DNA from: Polymyxa betae A26-41
Lineage: Eukaryota; Protista; Endomyxa: Phytomyxea
DNA length: 50,146 nt
Assembly (NCBI GenBank): GCA_003693705.1
Contig: RBZT01000402.1
Location: 1 to 50,146 of the forward strand
Reading direction: 5' to 3'
A program made the translations under genes and the position numbers. Positions 11,690 through 46,283 of this stretch are shown one piece after another (position 1 is the stretch's first letter; each line of letters starts with the position of its first letter). The notes beneath the pieces were generated by a model. That model searched no databases, was not told the origin of the DNA, and saw only the letters and a list, made by a program, of their open reading frames with translations.

Positions 11690-14600
11690 ATGCGGATGAC
11701 GCCCTTCTTCTCTCTGGTCTTTGCCTTCGCGGTCGCTGTGTCAGCGTCGTCGCCCATCGACTTCATCTGGGTGCGATCCGACTTTCTTAACCTGTTAGAA
11801 CGACCCTACGAAAGGCCGAAGCCGTTCAAAATTACTTTGAAGCGTGCTGAAGTCACACAGGGAGTAGATCTGCTAGAGAGTTTCTGCAGCAAGGTCATAA
11901 TTTGTAGTAGTACTTATTTATGTGGAGGGTTATACCAGCTTAATTTTGCAGATTGCACTTTCGTTGTGATTTCTCACAACTTTCGTATCTGATTTCGCAC
12001 AACTTTCGTATTTTTGTTAGTTGACTACATATTGCTTGCTGGAATCCTTATGTCTTGCTACAGGGCGTTTTTACGCATCGTCATATTGATGCAGCAATCC
12101 ATGTTCTTGAACTTTTATCAGAAAAGATTACGTCCTCCCATTCCTATCGGCTATATGGAGTCATGATCAAACTGATTTCAGTTGTTGATAGCTCTTCAGA
12201 ATTCACTCAAAGCTGGCTGAAGACATTATCAACTAAAGCTCGATCGATTCCTTCAGAATTTCAACTCATTGATTTTGCACGTGCTCTCTGTCGTTCAAAG
12301 TGAGCATCTACACTTCGGGATCCTAATTTGACCCCCTACCTTTTAGGTTCGATCACCTGCGCGACTCCAAAGGATTTATCGATCTTGTTTCGAATTTAAC
12401 CGTCCGCTTTACTCCGGATCAGATTGAATCTTTTTTTACGTCCCAGATCATGGATGTCCATTCGCTCCCACATTTGGAATTGTTCGCCCGACATATCCCC
12501 CCTGACAGCCGGTTGGATATTCTGAGAAATTTGATTTCAAAAATGTAAGTTTGCTGCACTTTGTTCTTGGCAACAGAACGCTGACCGTCAATATAGAGCT
12601 AGTATTCGAATGTCTTTGCATCTTAGCAAGCATAGAAGCCACCAACGATTTCAGTGGGAGGACCATGATAAACAGCTGCTTCGTATAGAACTTTTTCACA
12701 GACTCGCTCGTGCATGCAGAATAGAAGCAGAAATTATCCACTTTCTTCTGAAAACTGCCAGGTGAAAGAGCATCTTCATTAGTTTCTTCTCTTTAGTTTG
12801 CGAGCGCAAAATAAAGCTGACCGGTTTCTTCTAGGGAAAACCTGGACCGAAGCAGAGAACATTACTACATCGCGCTTCAGCTAATGCATTTGGATCCCGG
12901 CATAGTCCAGTCTAACATTAGCTTGCTATTTGAGCTCCTGCCTCTTTCTAAAGCTCGTTTTCGCTGGAAGCGTCGCATCATTAGGAGCATTGTCAAAAAT
13001 TTGCCCGAATCTTGCTTTCGGCAACAAGCTGAATATGGTCGAACCATACTGGACCTTTATGTAGAGTAAGTCTAGTGATCTGTTGCTGCAACCTCTCATC
13101 AACCACGATTTAGAGTAAACGACCTCGATTACCCCACGTTCAAGAAAATGGAGGATAATACTCCCATAGATATTGTCCACAAAGTTCGTCGTAATGCTCT
13201 GGCAAGCATGGACCCAGACTTGTGGCACGCTTTATTTCTTGATTCCAATTTCGGTTCCATCAATGCTCTCGGCGTCCGACGATTTTTTAATGATGTTTTT
13301 GAGAATCACGAAGGCCGAGGCCGTTTCGAAGCAACTGTGCTTCTAGATATCTTTCAGCGTTATAAAATCCGAAGCAAGCATGATGTTGCCATGAAGGGCT
13401 ACTGCCCGAAGCTGCTGGTTAAAAACTGGTACATTCCTCTTTTTGGTGGTATTTTTCTAGCTCACCGTTCTCTTTTCAGTCGACTTCTGCTCGATTCGTT
13501 TTCGAAAGCCAAAGGACAATCCATTCTGCACTTCATTGACTATTGCGAAAGAGCCAATGTCTTGAAAGATATCATCGATGAAATTCCGGCCATGTTCTCG
13601 AATCCAGATGCTTCGGCACAGTTCATTGCGTATTTTGCAGATTCAATGTAGGTCGCTGGCTTATTTCTTCACAGCCTTTCGTAAATACCTTCGTTAGCGT
13701 GTCTATCAGCGGTAAACCAAGTGAAAGTCAACCACTAGTTGCCAAGGTGCAAGACATTGGGCAGAAGATTTTATCAACATGCCAACGGTTTCCTTGGCTC
13801 TGTGATATCTTCGTCAGATTCTTCGTCAACCATTTTCGGCACGATGAGATGCTCTTCTCAAGATCGGAGATGACTGCAGAGACCAGCATATCCAGTTTAT
13901 ACATCATATTTCTTAGGTAACTTCTTTTGACCTCGTCAAAGGTCTCTTGATTATTCCTCAACTCTCTCATTTCGATATTTGTTGTTTTTCGACAATCTTC
14001 TCCATTTCATTCACGTAATGCTTTCCATATATTCCTTGTGCGCCAATATGATCTGACACATTCTTTTTAGCCTCAAACAGTACAAGTCGAAGCCTTACTA
14101 TCGCATCACTAGTCTTATAGACGCAAGCCTTGACAAAGCTCTAACATTGCATCGAGAAGGAGGAAAAAACGCACCTCTGGAGCAATCAATCATAGCTCTT
14201 GCTCTCAAAATCGCTAAAGACCTCGGAACCGTTCCCATCTGTTTCCGCTTACTTTCGGGACAGCTAGTTCGCTTTCCGTTAAACGTATTGACGAAACCAT
14301 TTCGAGCTTTGTGGAAAGAACAAGGATTCGACAAATTTGCCAGGGCTCTCTTTAGCACTAATCAGCTGCTCACCAAGTACCAACCTCTACTATCCCATGG
14401 CTTCCATCGGGTCCCTATCACGGCAGTCTCTGAACGCCGCATCAGCAAGGGCCGCATGAGAATTCGAGAAATCGTCAGTATCGAAGACGATTATGAGATA
14501 ATCAAGCAAATCGGGTACGGCTCGTACGGAACTGTTTACCAAGCTCGAGTCAACGACCATGTCGTCGCGATAAAAAAGATGGGTCTTCGTAATGCTTGCG

Positions 14601-17024
14601 TCGATTCAGAAGTCGAATTCATGTCTACATTCTGCCATTCGAACGCGATTCCTGGACTGGTACAACTTCTCGATATTGCTAAAACCGAGTATGATATCTA
14701 TCTCGTTATGGAGCTGATCGAAGGCCAGCGACTTTATGACTGGAAGGTTCCTGACGACCCTGAATGTGGTGCAAAAGAGTTGGTATCGATGGCGTATAAA
14801 ATAATAATTACTCTACATCGGCTTCATGAGGTCAACTTGTTCCATGGGGACCTGCATCACTGTGGCAACTGTAAGGGCCTTCGTTATTCAGCAAAATCAT
14901 TTAGCTTTCAATCCTATGAAAGAAGTTGTGTTCATGTTTGATATACGTTTTCTTTCGGCTTTTCTCTGCTCTTATGTCATTCTTAGTTATGGTTGAGCAT
15001 CCTTCAAAAGACATAGTCCTGATTGATTTCGGATTCACTAAACAAGCGAAGTGCGTTTGCCAAGATGGTCCCGATATGTATGATCGTTTCATGGAGCTGT
15101 TATTGAAAGTCAAAGAAAAGTTCGAGCTCAGTTGGTACGAGCCTGCTCCTGAATCATATCGTCCCTTTGAGGCGATGCTGCGGAAGTTGAGGCATCGCTC
15201 TCCCAACTGCTCTGATTTCTTGGTAGATCCAGTGTTTGAAAATCTTTGTTCAGAAGTTTCTTACAGAAAGTCTTTACAAGCTTCTGAATTTCCTATCCGG
15301 CCCGAATTTGAGAGTTTACACTCAGATTCGGGCTCGGACCCAGATGCGGATCATACCAATGATAAGTCCTGCCACCATTCCACAAGTTTCACTGCTGACC
15401 AGAAACTGTTCTCGCCTCTGAGCGAGATTACTCCGTTCGGTTCAAGCTGCTCTGATCTGGGTTCCCCGTTTGCTAAACCACGCGAATCTTCTGTTATGGA
15501 GCCGTTTGAATCTATCATTGTGACATCCGAGGCTTCCTTTTTCCAGCCCCCATTGCGTTCCCAAGATCGTGATGGATCAGCACCTTTTAAGCCAAGAAAA
15601 CAGTGGAATATTCCCATCGGCAATTCTTCGAAGCGATCTACTCCTCTCAAAGCGGAATCCGGGTTGTCCTCGCATACTCCTGATGAGTCTATTGACCAAA
15701 TAGGTCCTGGAACACCACAAGCTAAAGCTTCTTTAACGGAAAGCAACTCCTCAATGTCCCGAAATATTAAATCTGATGATGTCCCAGCTCCGACAAATTC
15801 CCAGTTAGTACCAGAGGACGATGATAACCAATCTAAGGCCGACAACTTGCAAAAAAGCATATGTAAAAATTTCACCGAGACGAAAATTGATGCTATTATA
15901 GGAGATTTCCTAGATGCATTTGACCCAGAAAAATCCTTTCATATTGTTGACAGTAATGCCAATCCTAACAACAGTTCGCCTGGACTTTCTACTACATCAA
16001 ACAAGTCCAGCAGTTCTCAAATTGCTGAACAGTTTATGCAACGCTGCTCAGAAGAAGACTCCTCAAGTTCCAACGTCGATAATAATGCAAATCAGAGTGA
16101 CAATTGCAACCATACTGTTATTGAAAGCCCAATGGCACAATTCATTCCATCCGAGTGCATAAGAGAAGCTATAATACCGATGCAAAGTGATTCTGGCTCT
16201 CAAGACGATAATCTTAATGCGTCCTCAAAGAATTTTGGAAAAATTGCTTCTACTAACGGAGGTCCTACTGTGTCGGCGACCGAGGATAATACCTGCATGA
16301 GCTCAACTTCCGAATTTCTCCAGTCTGCAACTGAAGCTGAACTGCCTCCTTCTTCAGGAACATGCAATGAAGCTCGTATGTCGACTACTGGTGATGATAC
16401 CTACACAAGCTCGACTTCCGAATGCTTCCAATCTGCAACGGAATATTCATTGCCGCTTTTCTCGGAAGACCCTAATCTTATCATCCCCCATGGTATCTCT
16501 TCCAATGAATTGTCTTCCTTAAATACTTCTGATCAAGAAAATACTTCTAACCTTGAATCGTCACGTTCACTTAATAACATCTCCATAAATCTGCCCTGCA
16601 CTTCTCGTGACCGGCATATTTCCCCTTCAGACGATGAAAAGCCACGCTCACTTCCTGTCAATCCAGAAAAAAGTCACGATTGTAATGAGCCGTCCGACTC
16701 GCTCGGTTCGCCAGGACCCATCTCCGATCAAAAGAGGCCTTCTTCTTTAGCTGCTTCTGATTCGAAGAGTTCATCAGAGAGTAACGAACGCCCAGGTACT
16801 CTGAATTTTGGCACATATTCTGAAAGTCTTCAACCAATTACATCGTCATAGTTGTTTGTGTTATGCTCACATTTTTGTTTATAGGTTTCACGACAACTAT
16901 ACTGATCTGGCTATCATGTGGGTTCGTCACGCTGATAATGTTGGCAGCAGCTTCCATTTATGTAAAGAGGACATGCGAGGCCAGGCGGCCTAGACTTATC
17001 GATCTTAGCCATAGCCAATCGTAA
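11690..17024 (+). CDS. Signal-peptide protein kinase with a Ser-rich stalk and C-terminal TM helix (predicted type I membrane ecto-kinase), 10 exons, ~1,440 aa
   Basis: In-phase GT-AG exons 11690-11893, 12064-12299, 12347-12544, 12835-13065, 13114-13428, 13480-13647, 13698-13916, 14071-14870, 14987-16795, 16885-17024. Signal MRMTPFFSLVFAFAVAVSA; kinase motifs IGYGSYGTVY, VAIKK, EVEFM, HGDLH, DFG; last exon TTILIWLSCGFVTLIMLAAASIYVKR. Confidence 0.85.
11968..12012. repeat. 23-nt tandem duplication in intron 1 of the kinase gene
   Basis: gatttcKcacaactttcgtatYt x2. Confidence 0.8.
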
Positions 17025-17975
17025 ATCAGCTTCGTCTCTGGATTGATTGGCAGGCATCGGATTATGTTCGTGCTATTACATACCCGATTTTATCTTATAA
17101 TTTATACCAGAATAAATTCTTACAAAATCATTTTAGAGCATCAATTTGCTCTCAGTCGTGTCAGAATTTTGCTACATTGATTATTCATTCCACTATGCTT
17201 TGAGATCATGCTTCTTACGAAGCGCATATTGGAACAAATTGCTCATTCCTGCACGCTCGTAGCAATGGCGCAGAGATGAGTGAAGGCAGGTTTTCTCGTC
17301 GAAGTCAGCACGATTGCAAAAGAGATATCGCTGCAGTTTCCAACTACCAACAAGCAATGAGTTAGTAATGGCAGATTCAGACTGCCTACGACTTATGTCA
17401 AGACCCTGCAATCGAGTGAAGCGACAAAATTACAACATCGATCAAGCAGATTCTGGAAGCAAAACAGAAAATTCAGGTACGCGGCCTCTCATGGTCAAAT
17501 GAATCACATCCGCGCTGAGACGCAAAGTGACCAAACCTACCAACCAATCTCAACAATATGTTGCAAATCATTACCAAGGAAGTGATCGTCTGGGGTGCTG
17601 CTTGCGTCGTCCCGCCGGCAGTGGCGTTCGTCGGCTGGCGTCCTGCATCGTCGGTCGTGGTAGGCATACTGATTGCGGCGGCCCCGTCGGCCATTAGTGC
17701 TTAGGCTGATCGTAGAGATGCAAACTGCCAGTGAGATCTCAAAGTGACATCTCTCAGCTGCTCATACACCCCGATGTGTCCATCGGCCGTATCTAGGCAA
17801 GAGCTATACAACTTCATAAAGTCCAAGCCCTCATTCCCTTCCAAATAAATATAACTCATTTTAAAAATCGGCCACTGGTTATACACAACTTTTCAAAACG
17901 ACGATCCAGAATGGCGAAATTTTCCGAAATTTTTTTCGAATAGCCGAAAACGGAGCTTGAAATTTTCCAAAAAGA

Positions 17976-18060
17976 TGTGTTCGACGGGATTCGAACCCGC
18001 GCCCCGCGAACGAGACTAGCGCCTTAAGCTAGCGCCTTGGACCAACTCGGCCACAAACAC
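17976..18060 (-). tRNA. tRNA-Leu(AAG)
   Basis: GTGTTTG..CGAACAC acceptor stem, D-arm TGGCCGAGTTGGTCCAAGGC, anticodon arm CTAGC-TTAAGGC-GCTAG, long variable arm, GGTTCGAATCC, then a T5 Pol III terminator. Confidence 0.96.
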
Positions 18061-18327
18061 AAGATGCTTTTTCTTCCCCAACTGCAGCTTCTACCAATTT
18101 CGGATTTGAATATCATGAACGCTCGTTGTCAAGACAGTCAACATCCTATCACGAACTTGAAAATCCCAGTTTGATTTCTAATTTGAAATGAAATTTGTTG
18201 ATTGACAGATTCCAGAACCGATGTCGCTGCAAATGTTATCTGCTACCATCTCAGTGCCACAATCTTCTGAATTTTTAGATATTTTCGCTCGAAATCTGCA
18301 CGCGACGTTTTTATCAATGTTCCTGTA

Positions 18328-20883: not shown

Positions 20884-23800
20884 ATGATGATTGAGACAGA
20901 GCGAATCCCTGCACAATCGCTCACAAAATCGGTAGAGGATAAACGACAATACCGACGTCTTCGACTGCGCAATGGTTTGCGAGTCGTTATCGTTCAGAGG
21001 GAACCTGAACTAGATCAGGCCGATACCGCTAGCTGCTCTTCGCAGGTTAATTTTTTCTGGCATTTCTTCTTTCAAACCTTTCTATCCGCTCTGAATAGAA
21101 AATTCTGTTCGATTACGTTTTTTATTTTGGTGTTTTTTCTGTTAGGAAGAGTTTTTAATGTATTCTGAGAATTCTGATCTAGGATTCGGGTTCAGAAGCT
21201 GGTGGGGATAAGAAACCGGCCGCCTTAGCATTGGGCGTCACTGTTGGGCATTTCTATGATCCTCCTGAATTTCCAGGCCTTGCTCACCTTCTTGAGCATA
21301 TGTAAACCTTGTTTACCCCTTTCCGTTGATGGTTATCTTATTCAAAGAGCTCTTACAAAAGCTTGGATTCCAATTTCTATCTTCAATGAGAAGAATATTC
21401 GTGTTGTTTTTTCCTCATCGTTTTGGTTCAATTTTAGTAAATATTGATTGCTGGTGAATCCCTGGTTTTGATGTTGTCTGCAGGCTGTTTTTGGACCGAG
21501 CCCCGGAAGAGAACAGCTGGGAACAGTTCCTTTCCGAGCACGGCGGCTGGTCTAATGCAACCACGAGCGAAGAAACCACTCTATACTTTTATGAAATTCA
21601 TCCTGATTATCTCTCTGAATCAATTGCAAGATTCGTCTCACTTTTTTTGCTGGATCCGTTTCTCTGCCCTGAAGCTGTTGACAGAGAAGTTCAGGTCTAA
21701 GCAGCAGATGAATTCTCGATTTGCTCTTTCTTCCTTCTTCTGGGCTTTCGTCTTCCTTTTAGTTTTTGCTGCAAATTCTTTTGCTTGGTAGCGCTTTTCA
21801 CATTGAAAGAAGACTTCTTTACTAGCGATCAATTTTATCACTCAATCTGTCCAGGCAGTGGAATCCGAATTCCAAGAAGGACTTCTTGTCGATGAGCATC
21901 GTTTGACCCAGATTATGTGCCATATTTCAAAACCGGGTCATCCTTTCCAGAAGTTCGGCTGGGGCAATTGTAAATCGCTGTGCTCCCAATCGAGCTCAAC
22001 CGAGATCGCAGCAGCACTACGTCGATTCCATAACGACTATTATCGTGCTGAAAATATGAACCTGGTGATCATGGTTAGCGATAATCTGGATCAGGTCGAG
22101 GCCGATGTAATCAAACACTTTGGCCTGGTTGCTTCCGGCTCTGTTCCGAAGCTCGCTGCGTCAGGGCTACCGTTCAATATGGACGCCTCTGAACCACGCT
22201 TAATCAAGGTTTGCAAGTCGACTCGTTTTGGGTTTCAGTGTTCAAATATTTCGTCGCCTGCAATTTGCATTTCTTGTTGTCAAACTCAAGTCCAATTTTC
22301 TGGGCACTCTTCAATCGACTATTTCTGTTTTGTTAAATTGACCTCAGCACCTGTTTCTAGGTAGCCCCGGTGAAAGAGATTTACTCGTTGGAGCTCGTCT
22401 TCCAGCTCCAGAGTCTACAAACACAATATGCTGCTCAGCCATGGGGATATTGGGGTGAAGTCATTGGCGATGAAGGCCCTGGTTCTGTCGCCCAAATCTT
22501 ACGTGAGCGTGGACTGGCTTCGGAATTGAAAGCTGGACTTGGTCATGAACAGACTTACCAGAATTCCCTCTTCTTCCTTTTTACCATTCAGGTAAGATGC
22601 TACAAATAACCTCTTTAATACTTTTCTTCCTGCGATTGCTCTCTGGCAACTTTTTTTATTTTCCTCGTCCTTAGAGCATCTCTTTCTGAAGCTCTATTTG
22701 ACGTCAGCTGTCTCCGAAAACCCGTTCCCAATGCCTTTTCCATTTACTTTTTCGTTTTTTACTTCGTAAAAACTAAAAGGAAACCTTCTAGGTAACTCTT
22801 ACGAAATTGGGCCATTCCGAATGGAGAGAGGTGTTGAGATTACTGTTTGCTTACATCCATACCTGCGTTTCAGCAGGACCACAACGTCATTTGTGGGATC
22901 AATACTCTTCAATGGCGGCGGCATCATTCACCTGGGCGGAGCCGAAAGAGCCCGCCGAGACTGTTGAGGAACTTGCTTATTCCATGCAGCGTTATAGCTG
23001 GGATGATATCGTCTCGGGTCCTTATCTATGGCAGCGATACGACCCCGACCTGATTATGTCTTTCGGGAATCAGCTTCGACCTGAGAACGTTCTCGTATTC
23101 ATGCAAGCTTCTTTTGGCAGTACAAATTCGGACAGCCCAGGTAGGACGTGCTGTTAGTATTTCATGTTTAATTTTTGGAGCTTTGGAGCTTCCTTTCTCA
23201 TTCCTTTCTTTGCTTACGGGTATATTCTGGGTAGTTCGGGGACTTGGCCTCAATGCCAGGAATGCCTTGTGTTTTTGTGTCGGCACTGCCCTTTTTATTC
23301 AGCTAAATAGATAACTCTCTTCCTTTCCATTGCTCTCTTTGCTTTGCCCATTTGCTCTTCGCCGTCCCTTTGTAATTTCTATTTTGCATTGCCAAGGCTG
23401 TCATTGTTCTATTCTCCCTTTTTCTGAAATTCTTTTTATGTAACCAGTTTCGTGTAATTAATTTCCGATTCTTTTTAGACTCTGTTCCGACCGACCAATA
23501 CAAACCTACCGGATCCTGTTTTGATCCCTCTGGGTTTGATGGTCATGATGCTGTCCTTGCCAAAGGTATGTAATGTGCGGTCGGCTTCGCTGCTGAATAA
23601 ACAGCCATATTCAGGGGCTTCTAATGATTGCGATGGACGTCATGTTTCATCTAGTTTCTCCAAGACGCCACATTCCGAGACGATTGTCCCGTCCTGCAAT
23701 GGTAAAACTTCAAGGTTATTCTCCTAATTCATTCTTACATTAATCTTCAGGACAATTGCTAGAGATTGAGCCCTGGTTCGGGACAAAATTCCATCGAGCG

Positions 23801-25925
23801 TCGCTCTCTTCCAGCTTTATCTCGTCTTTAAACTCTGCTCACGACCCTGCCTTGTCTTTGCCATCTCGTTCATCCCTAATTCCTAAATCGCTCGCAATCG
23901 TCGACCGTAACGTACCTAGTTCGCCTCTGCAACCTTACGTCGCTTTCCGTAACGATCGCCTTCGTGTTTGGCATCTGATCGAACGTCAACACGTTTCTCC
24001 ACGCGCTCACATCACCCTTCGTTTCTACACTGGACTTTGTTACTCGTCGCCACTGGCAGCTGTAACTTCTCGTCTGCTGATCATGCTATTGGAAGATGCC
24101 TTGGGTACGTACTTATATGAGGGCGAAGTCGCCGACTTATCGATCAACCTGCGGGCGACAAGACGATGCCTCGAGTTTCAGGGTGAAGGGTTTTCTGACC
24201 GATTGTTCGAGTTCGTGCTTCAAGTTCTCTGCCACCATTCCAAATCCTTGTACCAGATGGAGATTCAGCCCGACCGGTTTCTTCTCATCAAAGAACGCTT
24301 GCAGATTGCTTGGCGCTCTGCCTTCTTCTCGCCTTCTGACCAGGTCTGAGTTTTCTCTTTTGAATTTGCTTTCGTTTTCGTACCTTTTTTCTGAAGTTCT
24401 CCAAATGTTTTGATTACATGATCAAATTTTGCCGTATTTTTTCATTATTCCTTAAGTCAGACACTCCTATTCTCACATGGTAATCGTTATGATGCTTCTC
24501 TAACTGTTTATTAGCACTTACGAGCTTATTCGTTTCTTTTCAGTTGCTAATTCTTTCGAAACTAAATATCGTTTTTTAGGCCTCATATGAGCGTTTGCGG
24601 GTTCTGCAAACTCCTAAGTTCTCTATAGAATCACTTCGAGCTGCATTAGACGATACGACTTTAGACGATGTAAGCTCGACACTGGAAGCGATCCGGTCTT
24701 CTGCCTTTATCGAAGCTTTTCTTCACGGCAACGTCAGCGCTGTCAACGTCGATCAACTCGCGAAAGGGATTTGTGATGCTTGGGGGTCAAGGCCTACAGC
24801 ACCCTCTCCACAGACACAGCCGGCCGTACGTCTATTGCCGCCGGGGGCAATTGCAACCTGGGCCAGGCCGTCATTCAACCCTTTGGAGAACAATTCAGTT
24901 CACGTCTCATATTATCAGTTTGGGCCAGATACCCTCCGAGATCGGGTACTCCTGCGATTTCTACAACGTATCTCTTCCGAGAACTGTTTCGATAGCCTCA
25001 GGTATTACAATCTTCTTTTGGTGTTTTATTAGAATTGTATTTTGTCGGTTTTCTAGTGTTTTCTTTCATTGATTTACGTTTTCTGTTCTTCTCTCTATTG
25101 ATTGCTTCTTCTCTGACTTGATCGATTCGCGAATTTACTTTGGCCTGTGTATTTAAACTTTCCCGTTTGCTAACGCCCTTGTGTTTTTGAGAGTCATTCC
25201 CTACAATAACGCTCTCTCAGGACAAGATCACAATTGGGCTATTCAGTTAGTGTTCAATTTGTTAATACTGATAGTGTACTCGGCTTGACAATTGAGGTCA
25301 TCTCGGCATCGCATTCGCCAATCGACTGCGAAGCTGCGATTGAGGCCTGGATCACTGATGAACTTTACCCATTGATTCGCTCTATGACCGATGATGTGTT
25401 TGATAATCATATCGAAGGTTTCATCATGGACATCGAGGTCAGCTCAATTATTCTTCCCTTTTGCCGATTTTTAGATTTGTTGCTCTTTTGCAATGTTTGA
25501 CATTACCTGTTTGTGATCAACTTTGTCCTATTTATCTCTTTTTCATCGCGCTGTGCAAATATTTCGTTGGTCATACTTTCCCATTTTGTCTTCTTTCTCC
25601 ACATTACATTTATTCACCAAGGTTTTTCTAGACTCAAGATTACAACCTTGGCTCCAAACACGATCGTCTGTGGGACGAAATAGTTACTCACAACTACGTT
25701 TTCGACCGGATGGACGAGGAGATATCAGTGATTGAGGGCGTCGAGCGCAAGGATCTGCTGTCTATGATGGATCGGCTGTTCAAGACTGACAGGCGATCAA
25801 AGCTTTCCACGCATGTGCTGGGTTCAAAATCGACAGCGTCCCTGGATCAGATTTCGCTCAATGAATCAATCGAGCCTTTCCTCAAACTGCCACAAATTTC
25901 TCCAAAAATCGATCTACCCTACTAA
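20884..25925 (+). CDS. M16A metallopeptidase (insulysin/nardilysin-like), multi-exon
   Basis: KSVEDKRQYRRLRLRNGL, inverted zinc motif GLAHLLEH (exon 21183-21301), HGGWSNATT, DREVQAVESEF, GHPFQKFGWGN, IGDEGPGS, EPWFGTKF, LRTRSQLGYSV. Confidence 0.95.
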
Positions 25926-29682: not shown

Positions 29683-32600
29683 ATGGAGACGCCTGTCGTC
29701 GAGCGACCAAATAGACGCCGTAATCGACGACCTCCGGCTACAGAATCAGTTGAGGCACAGCTTGCGCCTGCCGTCGCTTCGAATGGTAGACGTCGCAGAC
29801 CTCGGCGTCGGCCGGTGCTTGCGGCTCCCGATCAGCGGCCACCCCAGGCGGTCCAGAATGAATCGCAACCGCCATCATCACATCGGCGACGTCGCCGATA
29901 TGTTCGAAAAGCCGCCGAAAACCATTCATTACCTGCAGGTCATGACGCGACAGTCCCTCGAATATCTCAGGAAACTGAAGAGGTTCTATTTTTCTTGTTT
30001 GGATTTTAAAACTTTTCTCTTTCGTTTTAGATTCAAAGTCTACCCTGCATCATCTTAATCAATTGTTTTATATCTGATGCTTCCAAAGTCCTAATATTTT
30101 CTTCTTTAATCTGCACTCGTTATCTGCTCTACGCCCGGTTCTGTACTGAAAATCATTAGGGTGGACGCTTCGAAGAGATGACGAAACAACTTAATGAAGG
30201 CTCGTATCAGTGCATGATTTGCATCGATGGCATCGCTCGCGCTGTCGCTGTATATGCCTGTCCTTCATGCACTGTTGTATTCCATCTGGAATGCGCTAAA
30301 CGCTGGGGGCAAAGTCAGTCAAGCTCCACCAACGGCAAGATTCGATCATGGCGATGTCCCAACTGCCAATTCGTCGCAACCAAACGCGTTCCAACCCGTT
30401 ATTTGTGCTTTTGCGGGCAAAGTGCACATCCAGTATGTCATTTTTGGAAAGTTTTCGCTTCGTCCTTCATTTGCTGTCTATAAGTTTTTGTTTTTCTCTG
30501 TCAAGAGCAGGGATTCTCATTCTCTCTTGATTGCTTTATGACCTCTTTTATCTTTATTTTTTTATTGTGTTTCAGCTGCACCCATGATGCATTTAGAGCC
30601 CTCCAGATCATCCCTTTTCGCTGACATTGTCTTAGCCAGTCGATTCTAACCTTCCTGCTCACTCTTGTGGAGGCGTTTGTGGACGAAAGTCCTGTCCTCA
30701 TCCCTGTACACTGCTGTGTCATGCAGGACCATGCCCAGACTGTGCCGCTGTCGTGGCTGTTAAATGTGGATGTGGTCGCACAAAGACTGACGTACGATGC
30801 CATCATCGAGCCGAACCTGTCCTTTGCTCGTCCAATTGCCGACGGCTTTTACCATGCAAACGCCATACCTGGTAAGGTTCCTTTTGTTTTCTGTTTCTTG
30901 CTTGCTCTCGAACTTTGTTCTTTGATGTCCTTCATTTGAGGTCTTTCTCTTCAATCTTTGAAGCTTTTCTTTGTAAATTTGTCTTTGCGCTAAATTATTG
31001 CAATTGTGTTTTGATCAATTTCAATTTTTCTGATTTTTTTTGTGTTTGTGCTTCAACCATTCTCTCAAGTTTGTCCCCAGTCGTTTACCCTGTCACATTG
31101 GCCCTTGCGCTCCTTGCGACGTCTCCTACAATATTACGTGTTTTTGCGGCCAGACATCGGCTTCCAAACTCTGTGCCGACGCCACCCTACAGAAGCAGTC
31201 CGGGCGTCTGACATTCTCCTGCGGAAAGCCCTGCTCTAAACCTCTTGATTGCGGATTTCACACCTGTCGTCTGGAGTGTCATGCTGGCCCGTGTTTATCA
31301 TGTTCACGAGCTGTTGTCGATCCACAGCCATGCGCTTGTGGCCTGACAACGTTCCCAGGCGCACGCGCGAACTGTACCGACCCGCTGCCTGTTTGCGAGG
31401 CGTTCTGTGGCAGGAAATTCGAATGTGGTCATACCTGCCCACAGCCATGCCACGATTCGGATTGCAGTCCGTGCAGTGAATCGGTCGTCACGCTCTGTCG
31501 ATGTGGTCTGGTCCCGATTACAATGTCGTGTTCTGAATATCGCTCACGTATGTTAATTTTGAAAGCATATTTTTGGGGCCAGGTTGCTAAGTTTATTAAT
31601 TAGGGGATGAGGATTCTGTGGTCTGCGAAACCCTTTGTAAAAAACTGATGCGATGCGGGCGGCATCGGTGTCGGGAGCGATGCTGCCCCCGATCTGAGCA
31701 CACATGCCTAGAGCAATGTAATAAATTGCTTAACTGCGGTCTTCATCAATGCGATCTTCAGTGTCATGTTGACGTTTGCCCGGTATGTTAACAGCTTTAA
31801 GTTTTCTTCTCGATTTGTAACTGCAAGATATTCTTCCATTTTCCCTTAGATTTTTTGGTGTTTACTTTATCTTGTATTTTTTTTCGTCTTGACAGATTGT
31901 GTGTTTTTAAGTTTGTGTAACAGCCTTGCGGGCGGCCTATAACCGGTGGTCTGTCATGTGCTTGCGGCAGCACGCGAATTCGTGGTCCCGTTCCTTGCGG
32001 AACACCCCCCCCAGATTGCCAACTTCCATGTCGGCGTACAGATCGTGACTGTTCTCATCCATGCCGATACGTCTGCCATCCGGGATCTTGTCCTAAATGT
32101 ATGATACTTGTGAAAAGGCAAGTTATGTGTTTTCGATGTTGCATTTGATTCACTCAGCTGGTTTTTGTTAGGTTGTGCGCTGGTCATCACCTCGTGCTTC
32201 CGGCGATAGCTTGTTCTTCGCCCCCGACAGGCTGTGGGCGAACGTGTGGCCGCTCACAACCTTGTGGTCGTCATATCTGCACGAAACCTTGCCATGTCCA
32301 TGACGATGACCAATCGGTACCCCTTGATTGCTTCGACAACTGTTTTTTTATTTTTTCAGTTTGCGGTTTGATTTTTTATTTGATTGTTTCTAACACGGCT
32401 GAAATTGCATTTTTATTTACATTCTGCCGGGCTCCGATTACCTTTACCTTTCAGCTCATCTCCGCTTTGCTCTGTAGTGGTTTGTATTAAATGCTGCTAG
32501 TGTCAGGAGAAATGCAATCTAACACGGTCATGCGGGCATCCTTGCGTTGCTATCTGCCACGGTTTGGATCTATGCCCGCTTCAGCCTTGCAAGCAGGTCG

Positions 32601-42150: not shown

Positions 42151-42388
42151 GGTAATTGGGTTTGCGTCTTTGGTTTATAAAAAAAGTCACTGACAAGAGC
42201 GAGAACATCTTTTAAGGAATTTTTTAATGAAAACCGCTTTGTCCGTAATGGTGGGGCTTCCAAACCCTAGCATGATATCTACGGAGTCTGTTCGGGGTGA
42301 ATACAATCTCGTTTTGAAATAACGAGCCATTACCCAAAGGGGCTTCGAGTTGGCTCAATTCAGCTGGATCATTTCGGATTGCCCGAGC

Positions 42389-43282
42389 ATGGTCTTCGAT
42401 CGTTCCGATCCCTTCGCTGAGTTCGATCTGGCCAAAGTCGCCCACGTTGTCTTCAATCGGCCTGCCTTTAGTGATCTCACAATAATCGTCAATGGGACAC
42501 CGTTTTACTGCCATCGAGACATACTGACTTCTGCGAGCCCGTTTCTGCAGAATTCCATCGATTGTCAACCTAAGACTAAGAGAGCGATTGTCGAGCTCGA
42601 CTTTCCGGAGATTCAATTTCCCGATGGGTTCTGCTGTAAAGAGGATCACGATTCTGCTTCTTGGTTCAAGAAATATTTGCGCTTGTTATATGGATTGTCG
42701 AAGCCAGAGCCGGACGATTTCATCGAGCTAATCGCCATGGTTCAAATCGCCGATTTTCTGGTTTCTCCGTCGGTTTTATCTCTATGTGATTATCTACTCA
42801 GCGGGGCCTCCTTTGATCACGAGAACGTTTTCGCAATGGCGTTGTTCTGCGAGAAATATCCCCTGCCGGAGACATTTCAAATCGTGAAGGAGACCATTGC
42901 CGAGGATTTGTACGAAGTCGCCAATAATCCACAGCTCTACCAGATCAGCACGAAACATTTCAGAGACGTTGTTACGTTATCGATCTGTTCGCATCCGTGG
43001 ACGTTTTGGATCGTACTGGCCTATGCGTCCGGTGTGGTTCCGGAGAATTATGTTATTCGCAGCAAACAGCTTCAGATCGAAGATGCGGAAATGGGCAAGT
43101 TTTTTCGTGATCTCGCGAAAGAGCTGAGTAAAAATTGGACTCGACTGACGGTTGATGCGATATTTGAGGATCTTGAAAATTACGAAATAGTTTCGGGTTC
43201 CGCTGGCCGTGATGAGCAACTGTTTCTATACAAAACCATATCGGCCTGTTATCAGCGCCTGTTGTCTGAACGCGAAACTTAA
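42389..43282 (+). CDS. BTB/POZ(-BACK) domain protein, single exon
   Basis: FSDLTIIVNGTPFYCHRDILTSASPFL, F..YLRLLYG, ADFL..LC.YL, ENVFAM BACK-like helices. Confidence 0.9.
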   Translation: MVFDRSDPFAEFDLAKVAHVVFNRPAFSDLTIIVNGTPFYCHRDILTSASPFLQNSIDCQPKTKRAIVELDFPEIQFPDGFCCKEDHDSASWFKKYLRLLYGLSKPEPDDFIELIAMVQIADFLVSPSVLSLCDYLLSGASFDHENVFAMALFCEKYPLPETFQIVKETIAEDLYEVANNPQLYQISTKHFRDVVTLSICSHPWTFWIVLAYASGVVPENYVIRSKQLQIEDAEMGKFFRDLAKELSKNWTRLTVDAIFEDLENYEIVSGSAGRDEQLFLYKTISACYQRLLSERET

Positions 43283-44247: not shown

Positions 44248-46283
44248 ATGATGCATCTGGTGGCCCAGGCCCTGCTGGCGATCTGCTGCTTGAGGCAAAT
44301 TCCCACTCCAACATCAGACTATGAGCTTCCGCAGCTGTATACTATGCCGGTATGTGGATATCTTACATCCAACTCATTCGCTGAATATCATTCTATCAGT
44401 CTGACCGAGTGTTCGAATACGCCCATAATCTATCGGAGGAAATCATAGCGGATCTGGACCGGGTCGGTGCCAACCCAGAACCCGCTTCATTCGAAAATAC
44501 GATTCTGCCTTTAGATCGTATATTTTACAAACAAGCTTCGGCGGAATGCGCTTGCAGACATTTAGCTAATGACAACACTTCTGAAGAAGTTTTCCGTTAT
44601 GCTTGGATGGAGATCGTGAATTCGATTGGCTCCTGTAATAGGGACGTGTACAGGCGGGTTCGCATCGTGATATTATCGCTTCCGAAAGGTGATGAAAAGC
44701 ATCGAGTGGCTTTAGCCTGCGAGGCGCTATTACGACATCATTGCTTGGCGTTATCTCTATGGGAAGCCAGCAGATTCCGGGAGCTTCAGGAGAGAATATT
44801 TGCAATCAGAGAAGCAGCAATAGCGCCCGGTGTCACTGAAGTCAACGCCGATTTTATTCGTCTGCTAATCGCAGCTCGTACTGAGATGGTACAGTTTCTA
44901 CAGAAGCATAACGATTTTGCCTGTCGTACCTTGTCCGAAGCCTGTCCTGGGGCCCATTGGTCCATCAATCTATCATGTGCTGGAACTTTTGAAGAGATTG
45001 AATCCGCTTTGATGTCAATGTCGGAAACATTCAAGAATATCGTAAGGCTGTTTTTGATTTAAATGATTTCCACACACTCTCTCCCATCTATTTTTTGTAC
45101 TTGCCTTGGATTTTTAATATGCAAAAGTTTTTGTGAATTTTTCTTGTTTTTGGGTTTTTTTTTATGATTAAATGTGATTAGGGTCTTACAAGATTCCAAG
45201 GCGTTCCCGGTGTTGATTCAGAGGCATGGGATTGGTGCGATTATCAACAATCTGTGACATCGCGACTATCGTCTTTGCACGATAATCGCTGGGAATTGAA
45301 AGATGTCGTCTGGAATGGCCTCTTCTTCGTCGTCGAGAAGCTGTATGGACTCCGGGCTCAGCAACAATCCGATATTCATGTGCTACACTCGGATGTGATG
45401 GTATTCGAGCTGCTGGAAGAAGATGGCACTCCTCTAGGCCTTTTATTCTTAGATTTGATAACGAGGCCTGGCAAAGCTGTGTCTGTGTCCAATATCCCTC
45501 TCGTGTACCGATCTACCGATTCAAATATGAAGCGGGCCGCTGCAACCATCACCATGTCGCTTCCATCGCCATCTCACCGTCTGACGATTATTCAGGTTTG
45601 AGGTTGATTTCGAATTTTCTTCGAAATTAATTGACGCGATCTTACAGGTTTTTACTTTGTTTCATGAATTTGGTCACGCTCTGCATTGCCTGTTCAGTGA
45701 TACGAAATATTTCCTGTTATCGTCAGGTATGAGCCCCCTCGATTGGGTCGAATTTCCATCACACCTGCATGAAATGTGGGCTACCGACAGTCAAGTCCTA
45801 CATAGTATCGACCCAAGCCTCACCGACAGCGATGTTCGCACCATTCAAGACGAATTCCGCGTTCTTGTTGCCATCGACAAGTTCTATTCCTTTTATAACG
45901 CAATTCGTACATTGTATTGGAACCGCATCAGTCCAGCTCCGGAGAATTTCGAGGAATTTTCACGAAGTTTACAAGAACGCTACGGTCTCGGGCTGTTATG
46001 TCCATCAGAGCGGATTCTGGGCCCGCTTTTCCTTGTAGATCCGAATTTGACAAGCCCGGAATATTATGGGTATGCATATTCATGGCGTATTGCAAGATCT
46101 GCACAGGAATGGGTAATCTCGAACGGTGGCCTATGCAGAGAAGTCGGTGAGCAGCTTCGTAGAAAAGTTCTGTCGAAAGGAATCTCTGTCCCATATGAGA
46201 ACATGACTGATCTCTTCTATGATACTCATCGACATGTAGCATTACTTGAAGATCTCGGTCAGCTTTCCGTACATCTCTCTTGA
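44248..46283 (+). CDS. M3-family metallo-oligopeptidase (Dcp/oligopeptidase A-like) with a putative signal peptide, 4 exons
   Basis: Exons 44248-44349, 44400-45041, 45182-45595 and 45648-46283 in phase. ANPEPASFENTILPLD, LGLLFLDLITRPGK, TLFHEFGHALH, DWVEFPSHLHEMW, YYGYAYS. Confidence 0.9.

What the first reader, a model, noticed from the sequence alone, without database searches (positions are those of the whole stretch)
11690..17024. Inverted receptor-kinase topology: predicted surface ecto-kinase on a mucin-like stalk
Seen: a signal peptide, ~650 aa of helical-looking orphan sequence, a kinase domain and ~500 aa of Ser/Asp-rich low complexity. An extra exon missing from the ORF track (donor 16796, branch tgctcac 16864, acceptor 16884) encodes GFTTTILIWLSCGFVTLIMLAAASIYV-KRTCEARRPRLIDLSHSQS*, a TM helix with a basic inside tail of ~19 aa. 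No TM precedes the kinase. Known: receptor kinases place the kinase after the TM, in the cytosol. Inference: here the kinase faces outward on a stalk. In an intracellular parasite it could contact host cytoplasm or interface ATP and phosphorylate host proteins. Intron retention (stop at 16849-16851) would give a soluble secreted isoform.
Basis: partly seen in the sequence, partly recalled or inferred. Interest (0 to 1): 0.88.

Follow-up and report, generated by a model that had tools for sequence, protein, structure and literature searches.

The report
Outward-facing membrane-anchored kinase family, Polymyxa
A sugar-beet root parasite carries about twenty related genes whose protein kinase is predicted to sit outside the cell, held by a membrane anchor at the far end, the reverse of ordinary receptor kinases, which may let it act on proteins at the boundary with the host cell.

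Summary
The genome matches the Polymyxa betae draft assembly. An 11-exon, phase-consistent model (11690-17024, 1494 aa) gives: signal peptide, about 700 aa of helical orphan domain, kinase, about 500 aa Ser/Asp/Asn-rich linker, last-exon TM and a 19-aa basic tail. No TM precedes the kinase. About 20 paralogues share the kinase; seven show both a signal peptide and a C-terminal TM, and the N-domain is shared. An orthologue in another sample keeps exons 7-10 under purifying selection. The kinase keeps its catalytic residues but is minimal (non-RD, no APE segment). No clear member outside this lineage was found. Closest known: soluble secreted kinases of Plasmodiophora brassicae, Toxoplasma ROP kinases, and lumenal POMK/VLK/Fam20C; the papers searched describe none with this type-I layout. 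'Mucin-like' is loose, and the intron-retention isoform has no support. First readers of this scan already noted the family on other contigs. Verdict: new variant of a known kind.

The parts
11690..11893 (+). Exon 1: start codon, signal peptide (about residues 1-19, 11690-11746) and first mature residues; donor position uncertain
   Evidence: paralogues begin with a similar short signal-peptide exon
12064..12761 (+). Exons 2-4 (12064-12299, 12347-12544, 12597-12761): N-terminal region, no significant homologue
   Evidence: phase-consistent with short GT-AG introns; predicted frame scores best of the three forward frames; no paralogue hit; exon 4 aligns only at E 4.6
12835..13916 (+). Exons 5-8 (12835-13065, 13114-13428, 13480-13647, 13698-13916): family-conserved helical orphan domain; exon 5 ends in one ankyrin-like turn motif
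   Evidence: profiles hit 7-11 paralogue segments, 12 and 18 places in the genome; exons 7-8 conserved in orthologue L034; ankyrin match only 12 residues, E 0.07; no Pfam family
14071..14870 (+). Exon 9: pre-kinase helices (to about 14490) and kinase N-lobe to catalytic loop: Gly loop from 14513, beta3 Lys 14573, alphaC Glu 14609, catalytic Asp 14849, Asn 14867
   Evidence: Pfam PF00069 E 2.9e-14; 50% identity to P0001 over 258 aa
14987..15270 (+). Exon 10 start: DFG (15025-15033), 13-residue link to the alphaF Asp, reduced C-lobe with a co-varying Cys pair (15058, 15208)
15271..16795 (+). Exon 10 remainder: about 507-aa Ser/Pro/Asp/Asn-rich low-complexity linker, with one 81-nt internal duplication (16271-16351, 16379-16459)
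   Evidence: not conserved among paralogues
16796..16884 (+). Last intron, 89 nt, phase 1; in-frame stop at 16849-16851 if retained
   Evidence: an intron-like stretch precedes the TM segment in the paralogues; no reads
16885..17024 (+). Exon 11: TM helix (about 16899-16964), 19-aa basic tail, stop 17022-17024
   Evidence: equivalent TM with 7-25 aa tail in 12 other loci

Best explanation
A type-I membrane protein of a Polymyxa-lineage kinase family. The signal peptide sends the N-domain, kinase and linker into the ER lumen; the last-exon helix stops transfer and leaves a short basic tail in the parasite cytosol (inferred from sequence, repeated in paralogues). It travels to the plasmodium surface or a secretory organelle (inferred). 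The kinase has all catalytic residues but is non-RD with no activation segment, so it is probably constitutively competent (inferred); the conserved helical N-domain most likely binds substrates or partners, and the variable linker spaces the head from the membrane. It phosphorylates proteins at the host-parasite interface, either while tethered or after shedding, working like a membrane-anchored version of ROP kinases or of the P. brassicae secreted kinases. Shown: gene anatomy, family, conservation, motifs. Inferred: splicing, topology, location, activity, substrates.
For: Phase-consistent model without an upstream TM. Signal peptide plus C-terminal TM in L014, L015, L016, L017, L020, L024, L027. 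Short tails, N-side near neutral, C-side +1 to +5, no KKxx ER-retrieval motif. Orthologue L034 keeps exons 7-10 in order at matching boundaries, synonymous sites saturated, dN 0.26 in the kinase. Family separates from generic kinases at 100/99. Mix of intact and degenerate members, as in ROP kinases (PMC3682881). Co-varying Cys pair, p 0.015, or 0.06 without sister copies, would fit a disulfide. P. brassicae secreted kinases are active and reach host cytosol and nucleus (PMC7317818; bioRxiv 10.1101/2025.11.18.684874).
Against: No reads, localisation or activity data. Exons 1-4 lack homology support, so the link from signal peptide to kinase in this gene rests on splice logic and on analogy with paralogues. 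Host ER-derived membranes surround P. brassicae plasmodia (PMC13738674), so a tethered kinase may face a lumen-like space poor in ATP, not host cytosol. The catalytic Asp-Asn spacing is one residue longer than canonical. My TM filter demanded basic residues after the helix, so the positive-inside pattern is partly selected.
Confidence: 0.45

Rival explanations
1. Same topology, but a secretory-pathway or envelope kinase that phosphorylates the parasite's own secreted, surface or spore-wall proteins, like Fam20C, VLK or Toxoplasma WNG1.
For: Lumenal kinases with TM anchors exist and use lumenal ATP (PMC5142810). The anatomy cannot tell lumen from surface. WNG1 is a parasite-secreted kinase acting in the vacuole (PMC6442604, abstract only).
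Against: Expansion to about 20 fast-diverging, partly tandem copies with pseudokinases is more typical of host-facing families. TM spans of 19-29 residues and no KKxx motif lean to the plasma membrane (weak).
Confidence: 0.25
2. Outward-facing but non-catalytic: a pseudokinase-like adhesin, decoy or scaffold, in which fold and N-domain bind host partners.
For: Extra residue in the catalytic loop, no Lys at Asp+2, reduced C-lobe; several paralogues lack the Gly loop, catalytic Asp or DFG.
Against: This gene and its orthologue keep the Gly loop, Lys, Glu, Asp, Asn and DFG under purifying selection; Lys and Glu are invariant in 18 of 18 rows.
Confidence: 0.12
3. A glycan, lipid or small-molecule kinase in the lumen or at the surface (POMK-, Fam20B- or APH-like chemistry).
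For: HGD-type loop, no P+1/APE peptide-binding segment, weak ABC1 and APH Pfam scores; POMK is an ePK-like lumenal glycan kinase (PMC5142810).
Against: Best N-lobe matches are protein kinases (CDKL3, ULK, E about 1e-11); Bud32, also minimal, is a protein kinase (own knowledge).
Confidence: 0.08
4. The model is wrong at the 5' end: the signal-peptide exon belongs to another gene or is not functional, and the kinase is a cytosolic tail-anchored protein.
For: Weak exon-1 donor; exons 1-4 without homologues; a TM within 30 residues of the C-terminus is also the tail-anchor layout; one paralogue's apparent signal peptide (L019) proved to belong to an upstream protease gene.
Against: Signal peptides lead into the conserved N-domain exons in at least seven paralogues; exons 2-5 are joined by 47-73 nt introns in exact phase with branch sites; basic residues lie on the C-side of the TM.
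Confidence: 0.1

Closest known systems
Plasmodiophora brassicae secreted kinases (SSPbP22, SSPbP61, PbPE23, CEO98662; structural cluster 13 of PMC12503489: 20 P. brassicae and 5 P. betae proteins)
   Same: Plasmodiophorid, signal peptide plus kinase, expanded, some members degenerate; SSPbP22 and PbPE23 reported active, and PbPE23 detected in host cytosol and nucleus
   Different: Those are soluble (SSPbP22 375 aa, SSPbP61 366 aa). That survey removed TM proteins and proteins over 1000 aa, so this gene could not appear. No homology shown; the short signal-peptide-plus-kinase members seen here (L023, L031) may be among the five P. betae entries (not tested).
Toxoplasma rhoptry kinases (ROPK) and WNG kinases
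   Same: Lineage-specific expansion of signal-peptide kinases and pseudokinases in an intracellular parasite; family-specific Cys pair in the C-lobe (PMC3682881)
   Different: ROPKs have a full C-lobe with inserts and the alphaF WC motif, and no type-I anchor behind a linker (last point from own knowledge); no homology seen; independent origin likely
Secretory-pathway kinases (POMK, VLK/PKDCC, Fam20C, four-jointed)
   Same: Kinase domain in the lumen or outside the cell
   Different: POMK is type II (PMC5142810); the others are N-anchored or secreted (own knowledge); none is an expanded parasite family with a C-terminal anchor
Receptor kinases (RTK, plant RLK, Entamoeba TMK)
   Same: Signal peptide, single TM, kinase
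   Different: Kinase lies before the TM; cytosolic tail only 7-25 aa with no signalling domain
Bud32/PRPK-type minimal kinases
   Same: HGD-type loop, short DFG-to-alphaF link, reduced C-lobe; the 226-aa kinase 8k20_B (Bud32 by my recall) was the best kinase hit of the C-lobe profile
   Different: Match not significant (E 0.22); N-lobe scores best with ordinary ePKs; Bud32 is cytosolic or nuclear
Microsporidian host-exposed large gene families (PMC5423893)
   Same: Intracellular parasite, expanded kinase families enriched in signal peptides or TM segments
   Different: Unrelated lineage; a type-I kinase-out layout is not described in the passages read

Membership tests
Eukaryotic protein kinase-like (PF00069) | Gly loop, beta3 Lys, alphaC Glu, catalytic Asp and Asn, DFG | tested here: met
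   Asn lies at Asp+6 rather than +5, shared by most paralogues and the orthologue
Canonical ePK | Activation segment ending in APE, RD loop, full C-lobe | tested here: not met
   DFG to alphaF Asp 12-19 residues in 15 rows; HGD loop; C-lobe about 90 aa
Eukaryotic protein kinase-like (PF00069) | Phosphotransfer activity | not testable with these tools
   needs an assay
Receptor kinases (RTK/RLK) | Kinase C-terminal to the TM, in the cytosol | tested here: not met
   no hydrophobic segment above 1.59 in exons 2-10; TM in the last exon
Type-I membrane protein | Cleavable signal peptide, one TM, positive-inside tail | tested here: inconclusive
   met by hydropathy and charge in this gene and seven paralogues; SignalP and DeepTMHMM not available; splicing unconfirmed
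P. brassicae secreted kinases (cluster 13) | Signal peptide, no TM, under 1000 aa | tested here: not met
   TM present, 1494 aa (filters in PMC12503489)
P. brassicae secreted kinases (cluster 13) | Sequence homology | tested here: inconclusive
   only four family-like fragments among the best 150 of 1.84 billion representatives, none hit the N-domain or C-lobe profiles; library is unnamed; word searches blank
Rhoptry kinases (ROPK) | alphaF WC motif with disulfide to the alphaG-alphaH insert; full C-lobe | tested here: not met
   no WC motif and no such insert in alignment A6; no ROP structure among 50 PDB hits
Secretory-pathway kinases (POMK/VLK/Fam20) | Type II or secreted, lumenal kinase, family homology | tested here: not met
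   anchor is C-terminal; none among Pfam or PDB hits
Bud32/RIO minimal kinases | Family-level sequence or structure match | tested here: inconclusive
Mucin-like stalk | Ser/Thr/Pro-dominated, repetitive, O-glycosylated | tested here: not met
   S+T 26%, S+T+P 35%, D+E 15%, one duplication only; glycosylation untestable; threshold from own knowledge
Ankyrin repeat proteins | Tandem 33-aa repeats | tested here: not met
   one 12-residue turn-like match, E 0.07; no Pfam ankyrin

The most novel reading that the evidence does not exclude
A previously undescribed class of 'inside-out receptor kinases': active minimal protein kinases displayed on the surface of an intracellular plant parasite by C-terminal anchors and linkers of varied length, using host ATP to phosphorylate host proteins directly at the plasmodium boundary.
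Probability: 0.3. Interest if true: 0.85.

Novelty: new variant of a known kind. Interest (0 to 1): 0.68.

Why it matters
Effector surveys of plasmodiophorids discard proteins with a TM segment or over 1000 aa (PMC12503489; bioRxiv 10.1101/2025.11.18.684874 also drops TM proteins), so this family is invisible to them by design. If it faces the host, it is a tethered way for an intracellular parasite to rewire host phosphorylation, and antibodies to it would help settle what lies between plasmodium and host cytosol, an open question in this group (PMC10953367). P. betae is the vector of beet necrotic yellow vein virus and infects nearly without symptoms, so interface proteins bear on how it is tolerated. 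If it is lumenal instead, it is an independent invention of a secretory-pathway kinase with a new anchor. The minimal kinase core with a lengthened catalytic loop is of structural interest either way.

Tried and rejected
Word-indexed protein searches were blank, even for the known orthologue P0001, so these blanks carry little weight. Metagenome scans gave nothing or one distant kinase at 29% identity. AlphaFold of exon 9 was unusable (pLDDT 43); the C-lobe model (pLDDT 75) matched nothing significantly. Attempts to align N- and C-lobe fragments on the intronless paralogue L019 misaligned and were dropped. ESM Atlas: N-domain no hit at 0.9 or above; L019 kinase only generic divergent kinases. 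Rejected: a hidden TM before the kinase (the one hydrophobic in-frame stretch, 13429-13479, has branch and acceptor signals, and the orthologue has an intron there); a GPI signal (7-25 aa charged tails follow the helix); ankyrin-repeat identity; L019's upstream signal peptide (belongs to an aspartic protease gene); a conserved soluble isoform by intron retention. The sample DRR591303 could not be identified.
Full report
Source. The window is contig C273 of a 27,085,814-base, 1,001-contig eukaryotic assembly. The Polymyxa betae draft has 1,001 contigs, 27,085,946 bp and 45.1% GC (PMC6328671); the window is about 40-59% GC by kilobase and 42-44% over the gene. I take it to be P. betae, an obligate intracellular root parasite.

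Gene model. Three-frame translation and splice signals give eleven exons that are phase-compatible and stop-free, 1494 aa in all. Hydropathy was scored exon by exon: exon 1 has a signal-peptide-like core, exons 2-10 never exceed 1.59, exon 11 reaches 2.21 and ends in a 19-residue basic tail. A weak codon model prefers the predicted frame among the forward frames in exons 1-10 but not in exon 11; this partly reflects open frames.

Family. Exon 9 and a profile of its relatives find about 20 related kinases in the genome, three of them on one contig. In an N-lobe tree they form one group against generic kinases, including the three ordinary kinases of this genome that were tested, at 100/99 support. 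Profiles of exons 5, 6 and 7 and of the C-lobe hit 7 to 21 paralogue segments in the same order. Signal peptide and C-terminal TM are both seen in L014, L015, L016, L017, L020, L024 and L027; a TM alone in L021, L022, L026, L030 and L032; L023 and L031 have a signal peptide directly before the kinase. Against random stretches the rates are 8 of 15 versus 6% and 12 of 16 versus 11% (windows chosen after looking). An intron-like stretch precedes the TM segment in the paralogues; the best-scoring join is phase 1, as here, in six of eleven, and ambiguous in the rest. Tails are 7-25 residues, basic, without a KKxx motif; the linker runs from almost nothing (L022) to about 500 aa.

Orthologue. The profile search of 1.84 billion representatives returned P0001 first (E 2.8e-42), 50% identical to exon 9 including the pre-kinase helices. 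Its 1.7-kb contig from run DRR591303 carries matches to exons 7, 8, 9 and 10 in order at matching boundaries; synonymous sites are saturated and dN is 0.26 in the kinase part and 0.65 before it. So the gene is conserved in a second, unidentified organism, and is closer to it than to any paralogue (100/96). Two further short metagenome fragments (P0003, P0014) group with the family. The remaining hits are generic kinases, and none matches the N-domain or C-lobe profiles. The contig does not reach the signal peptide or the TM.

Kinase. The Gly loop, beta3 Lys, alphaC Glu, catalytic Asp and Asn and DFG are all present here and in the orthologue. The loop is HGD-type with the Asn at Asp+6 in most members. 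Only 12-19 residues separate DFG from the alphaF Asp, so there is no activation segment or APE, and the C-lobe is about 90 residues, one long helix and three short ones (pLDDT 75). N-lobe profiles score best with ordinary protein kinases; the C-lobe recalls Bud32 only at E 0.22. Some paralogues have lost catalytic residues (L019, L027, L028, L030), and L020, L021 and L033 show in-frame stops inside the matched region; these were left as they are. Two C-lobe cysteines vary together (p 0.015; 0.06 without sister copies), which would fit a disulfide and an oxidising compartment, but this is weak and unmodelled.

N-domain and linker. Exons 5-8 are a family-specific helical domain with no Pfam, PDB or Atlas match beyond one ankyrin-like turn. 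Exons 1-4 have no significant homologue, the weakest link of the model. The linker is 20% Ser, acidic and Asn-rich, not a typical mucin.

Mechanism. Most likely the protein is inserted as a type-I membrane protein with everything up to the TM in the lumen (about 0.85 for topology, my estimate), is delivered to the plasmodium surface, and acts as an always-on kinase on proteins at the host interface, tethered or shed (0.45). Rivals: a lumenal or envelope kinase for the parasite's own proteins (0.25), a non-catalytic binder (0.12), a wrong 5' model with a cytosolic tail-anchored kinase (0.10), a glycan or small-molecule kinase (0.08). [quoted passage not shown] The retained-intron isoform has no support; the family's soluble option seems rather to be separate short genes such as L023 and L031.

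Comparison. Secreted kinases are known in P. brassicae: SSPbP22 is active (PMC7317818), PbPE23 is found in host cytosol and nucleus (bioRxiv 10.1101/2025.11.18.684874), and a 20-member cluster with five P. betae proteins is reported (PMC12503489). These surveys exclude TM proteins. ROP kinases give the precedent for expanded kinase and pseudokinase families (PMC3682881), POMK and VLK for lumenal kinases (PMC5142810), and microsporidia for host-exposed kinase expansions (PMC5423893). I found no paper describing a signal peptide-kinase-linker-TM family; the library lacks most subscription papers, and the 2022 P. betae genome paper in Genomics was not read. It works like an exported parasite kinase but is not shown to be a member of any named family.

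Earlier notes. First readers of this scan flagged the same layout on other contigs of this genome. I had reached the family reading before looking; these notes are not independent evidence.

Verdict. Real gene, real family, unusual topology well supported by comparison but not by experiment. New variant of a known kind; interest 0.68.

Noticed in passing
G000:C77:15900-30700 (L014, L015, L016): Three family members within 15 kb; L014 and L015 are tandem and near-identical in the kinase N-lobe but differ in N-domain and linker (L014's linker is Glu/Lys-rich, coiled-coil-like).
   Followed up: partly
L023 (C826) and L031 (C319): Short genes with a signal peptide directly before the kinase and no family-type TM found: likely soluble secreted kinases (L023 groups with the family in the tree; L031 has a more ordinary catalytic loop).
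   Followed up: partly
L019:3097-4137 (C976, minus strand): Intronless degenerate family member lacking the Gly loop, catalytic Asp and DFG; just downstream of an aspartic-protease-like gene that also has a signal peptide and C-terminal TM.
   Followed up: partly
L038 (C53), L036 and L040 (C875), L037 (C181), C149:23199-23411: Copies of the N-domain with a very divergent kinase (C53) or none detected; some may be gene fragments.
   Followed up: partly
L020 (C41), L021 (C127), L033 (C407): In-frame stop codons inside the kinase match; the sister pair L020/L021 each has one TAG in the C-lobe match. Described only.
   Followed up: no
window 17974-18061, minus strand: tRNA-Leu(AAG) gene about 950 bases downstream.
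   Followed up: no
window 21858-24346, 31040-31600, 42350-43279, 45657-46280: Neighbouring exons match peptidase M16, NF-X1 zinc finger, BTB and peptidase M3: ordinary context.
   Followed up: no
window 11967-12011: 22-nt tandem duplication inside intron 1.
   Followed up: no
L034 (run DRR591303): Contig of a Polymyxa-like organism with saturated synonymous divergence from P. betae; may be a source of genome data for a sister species.
   Followed up: partly
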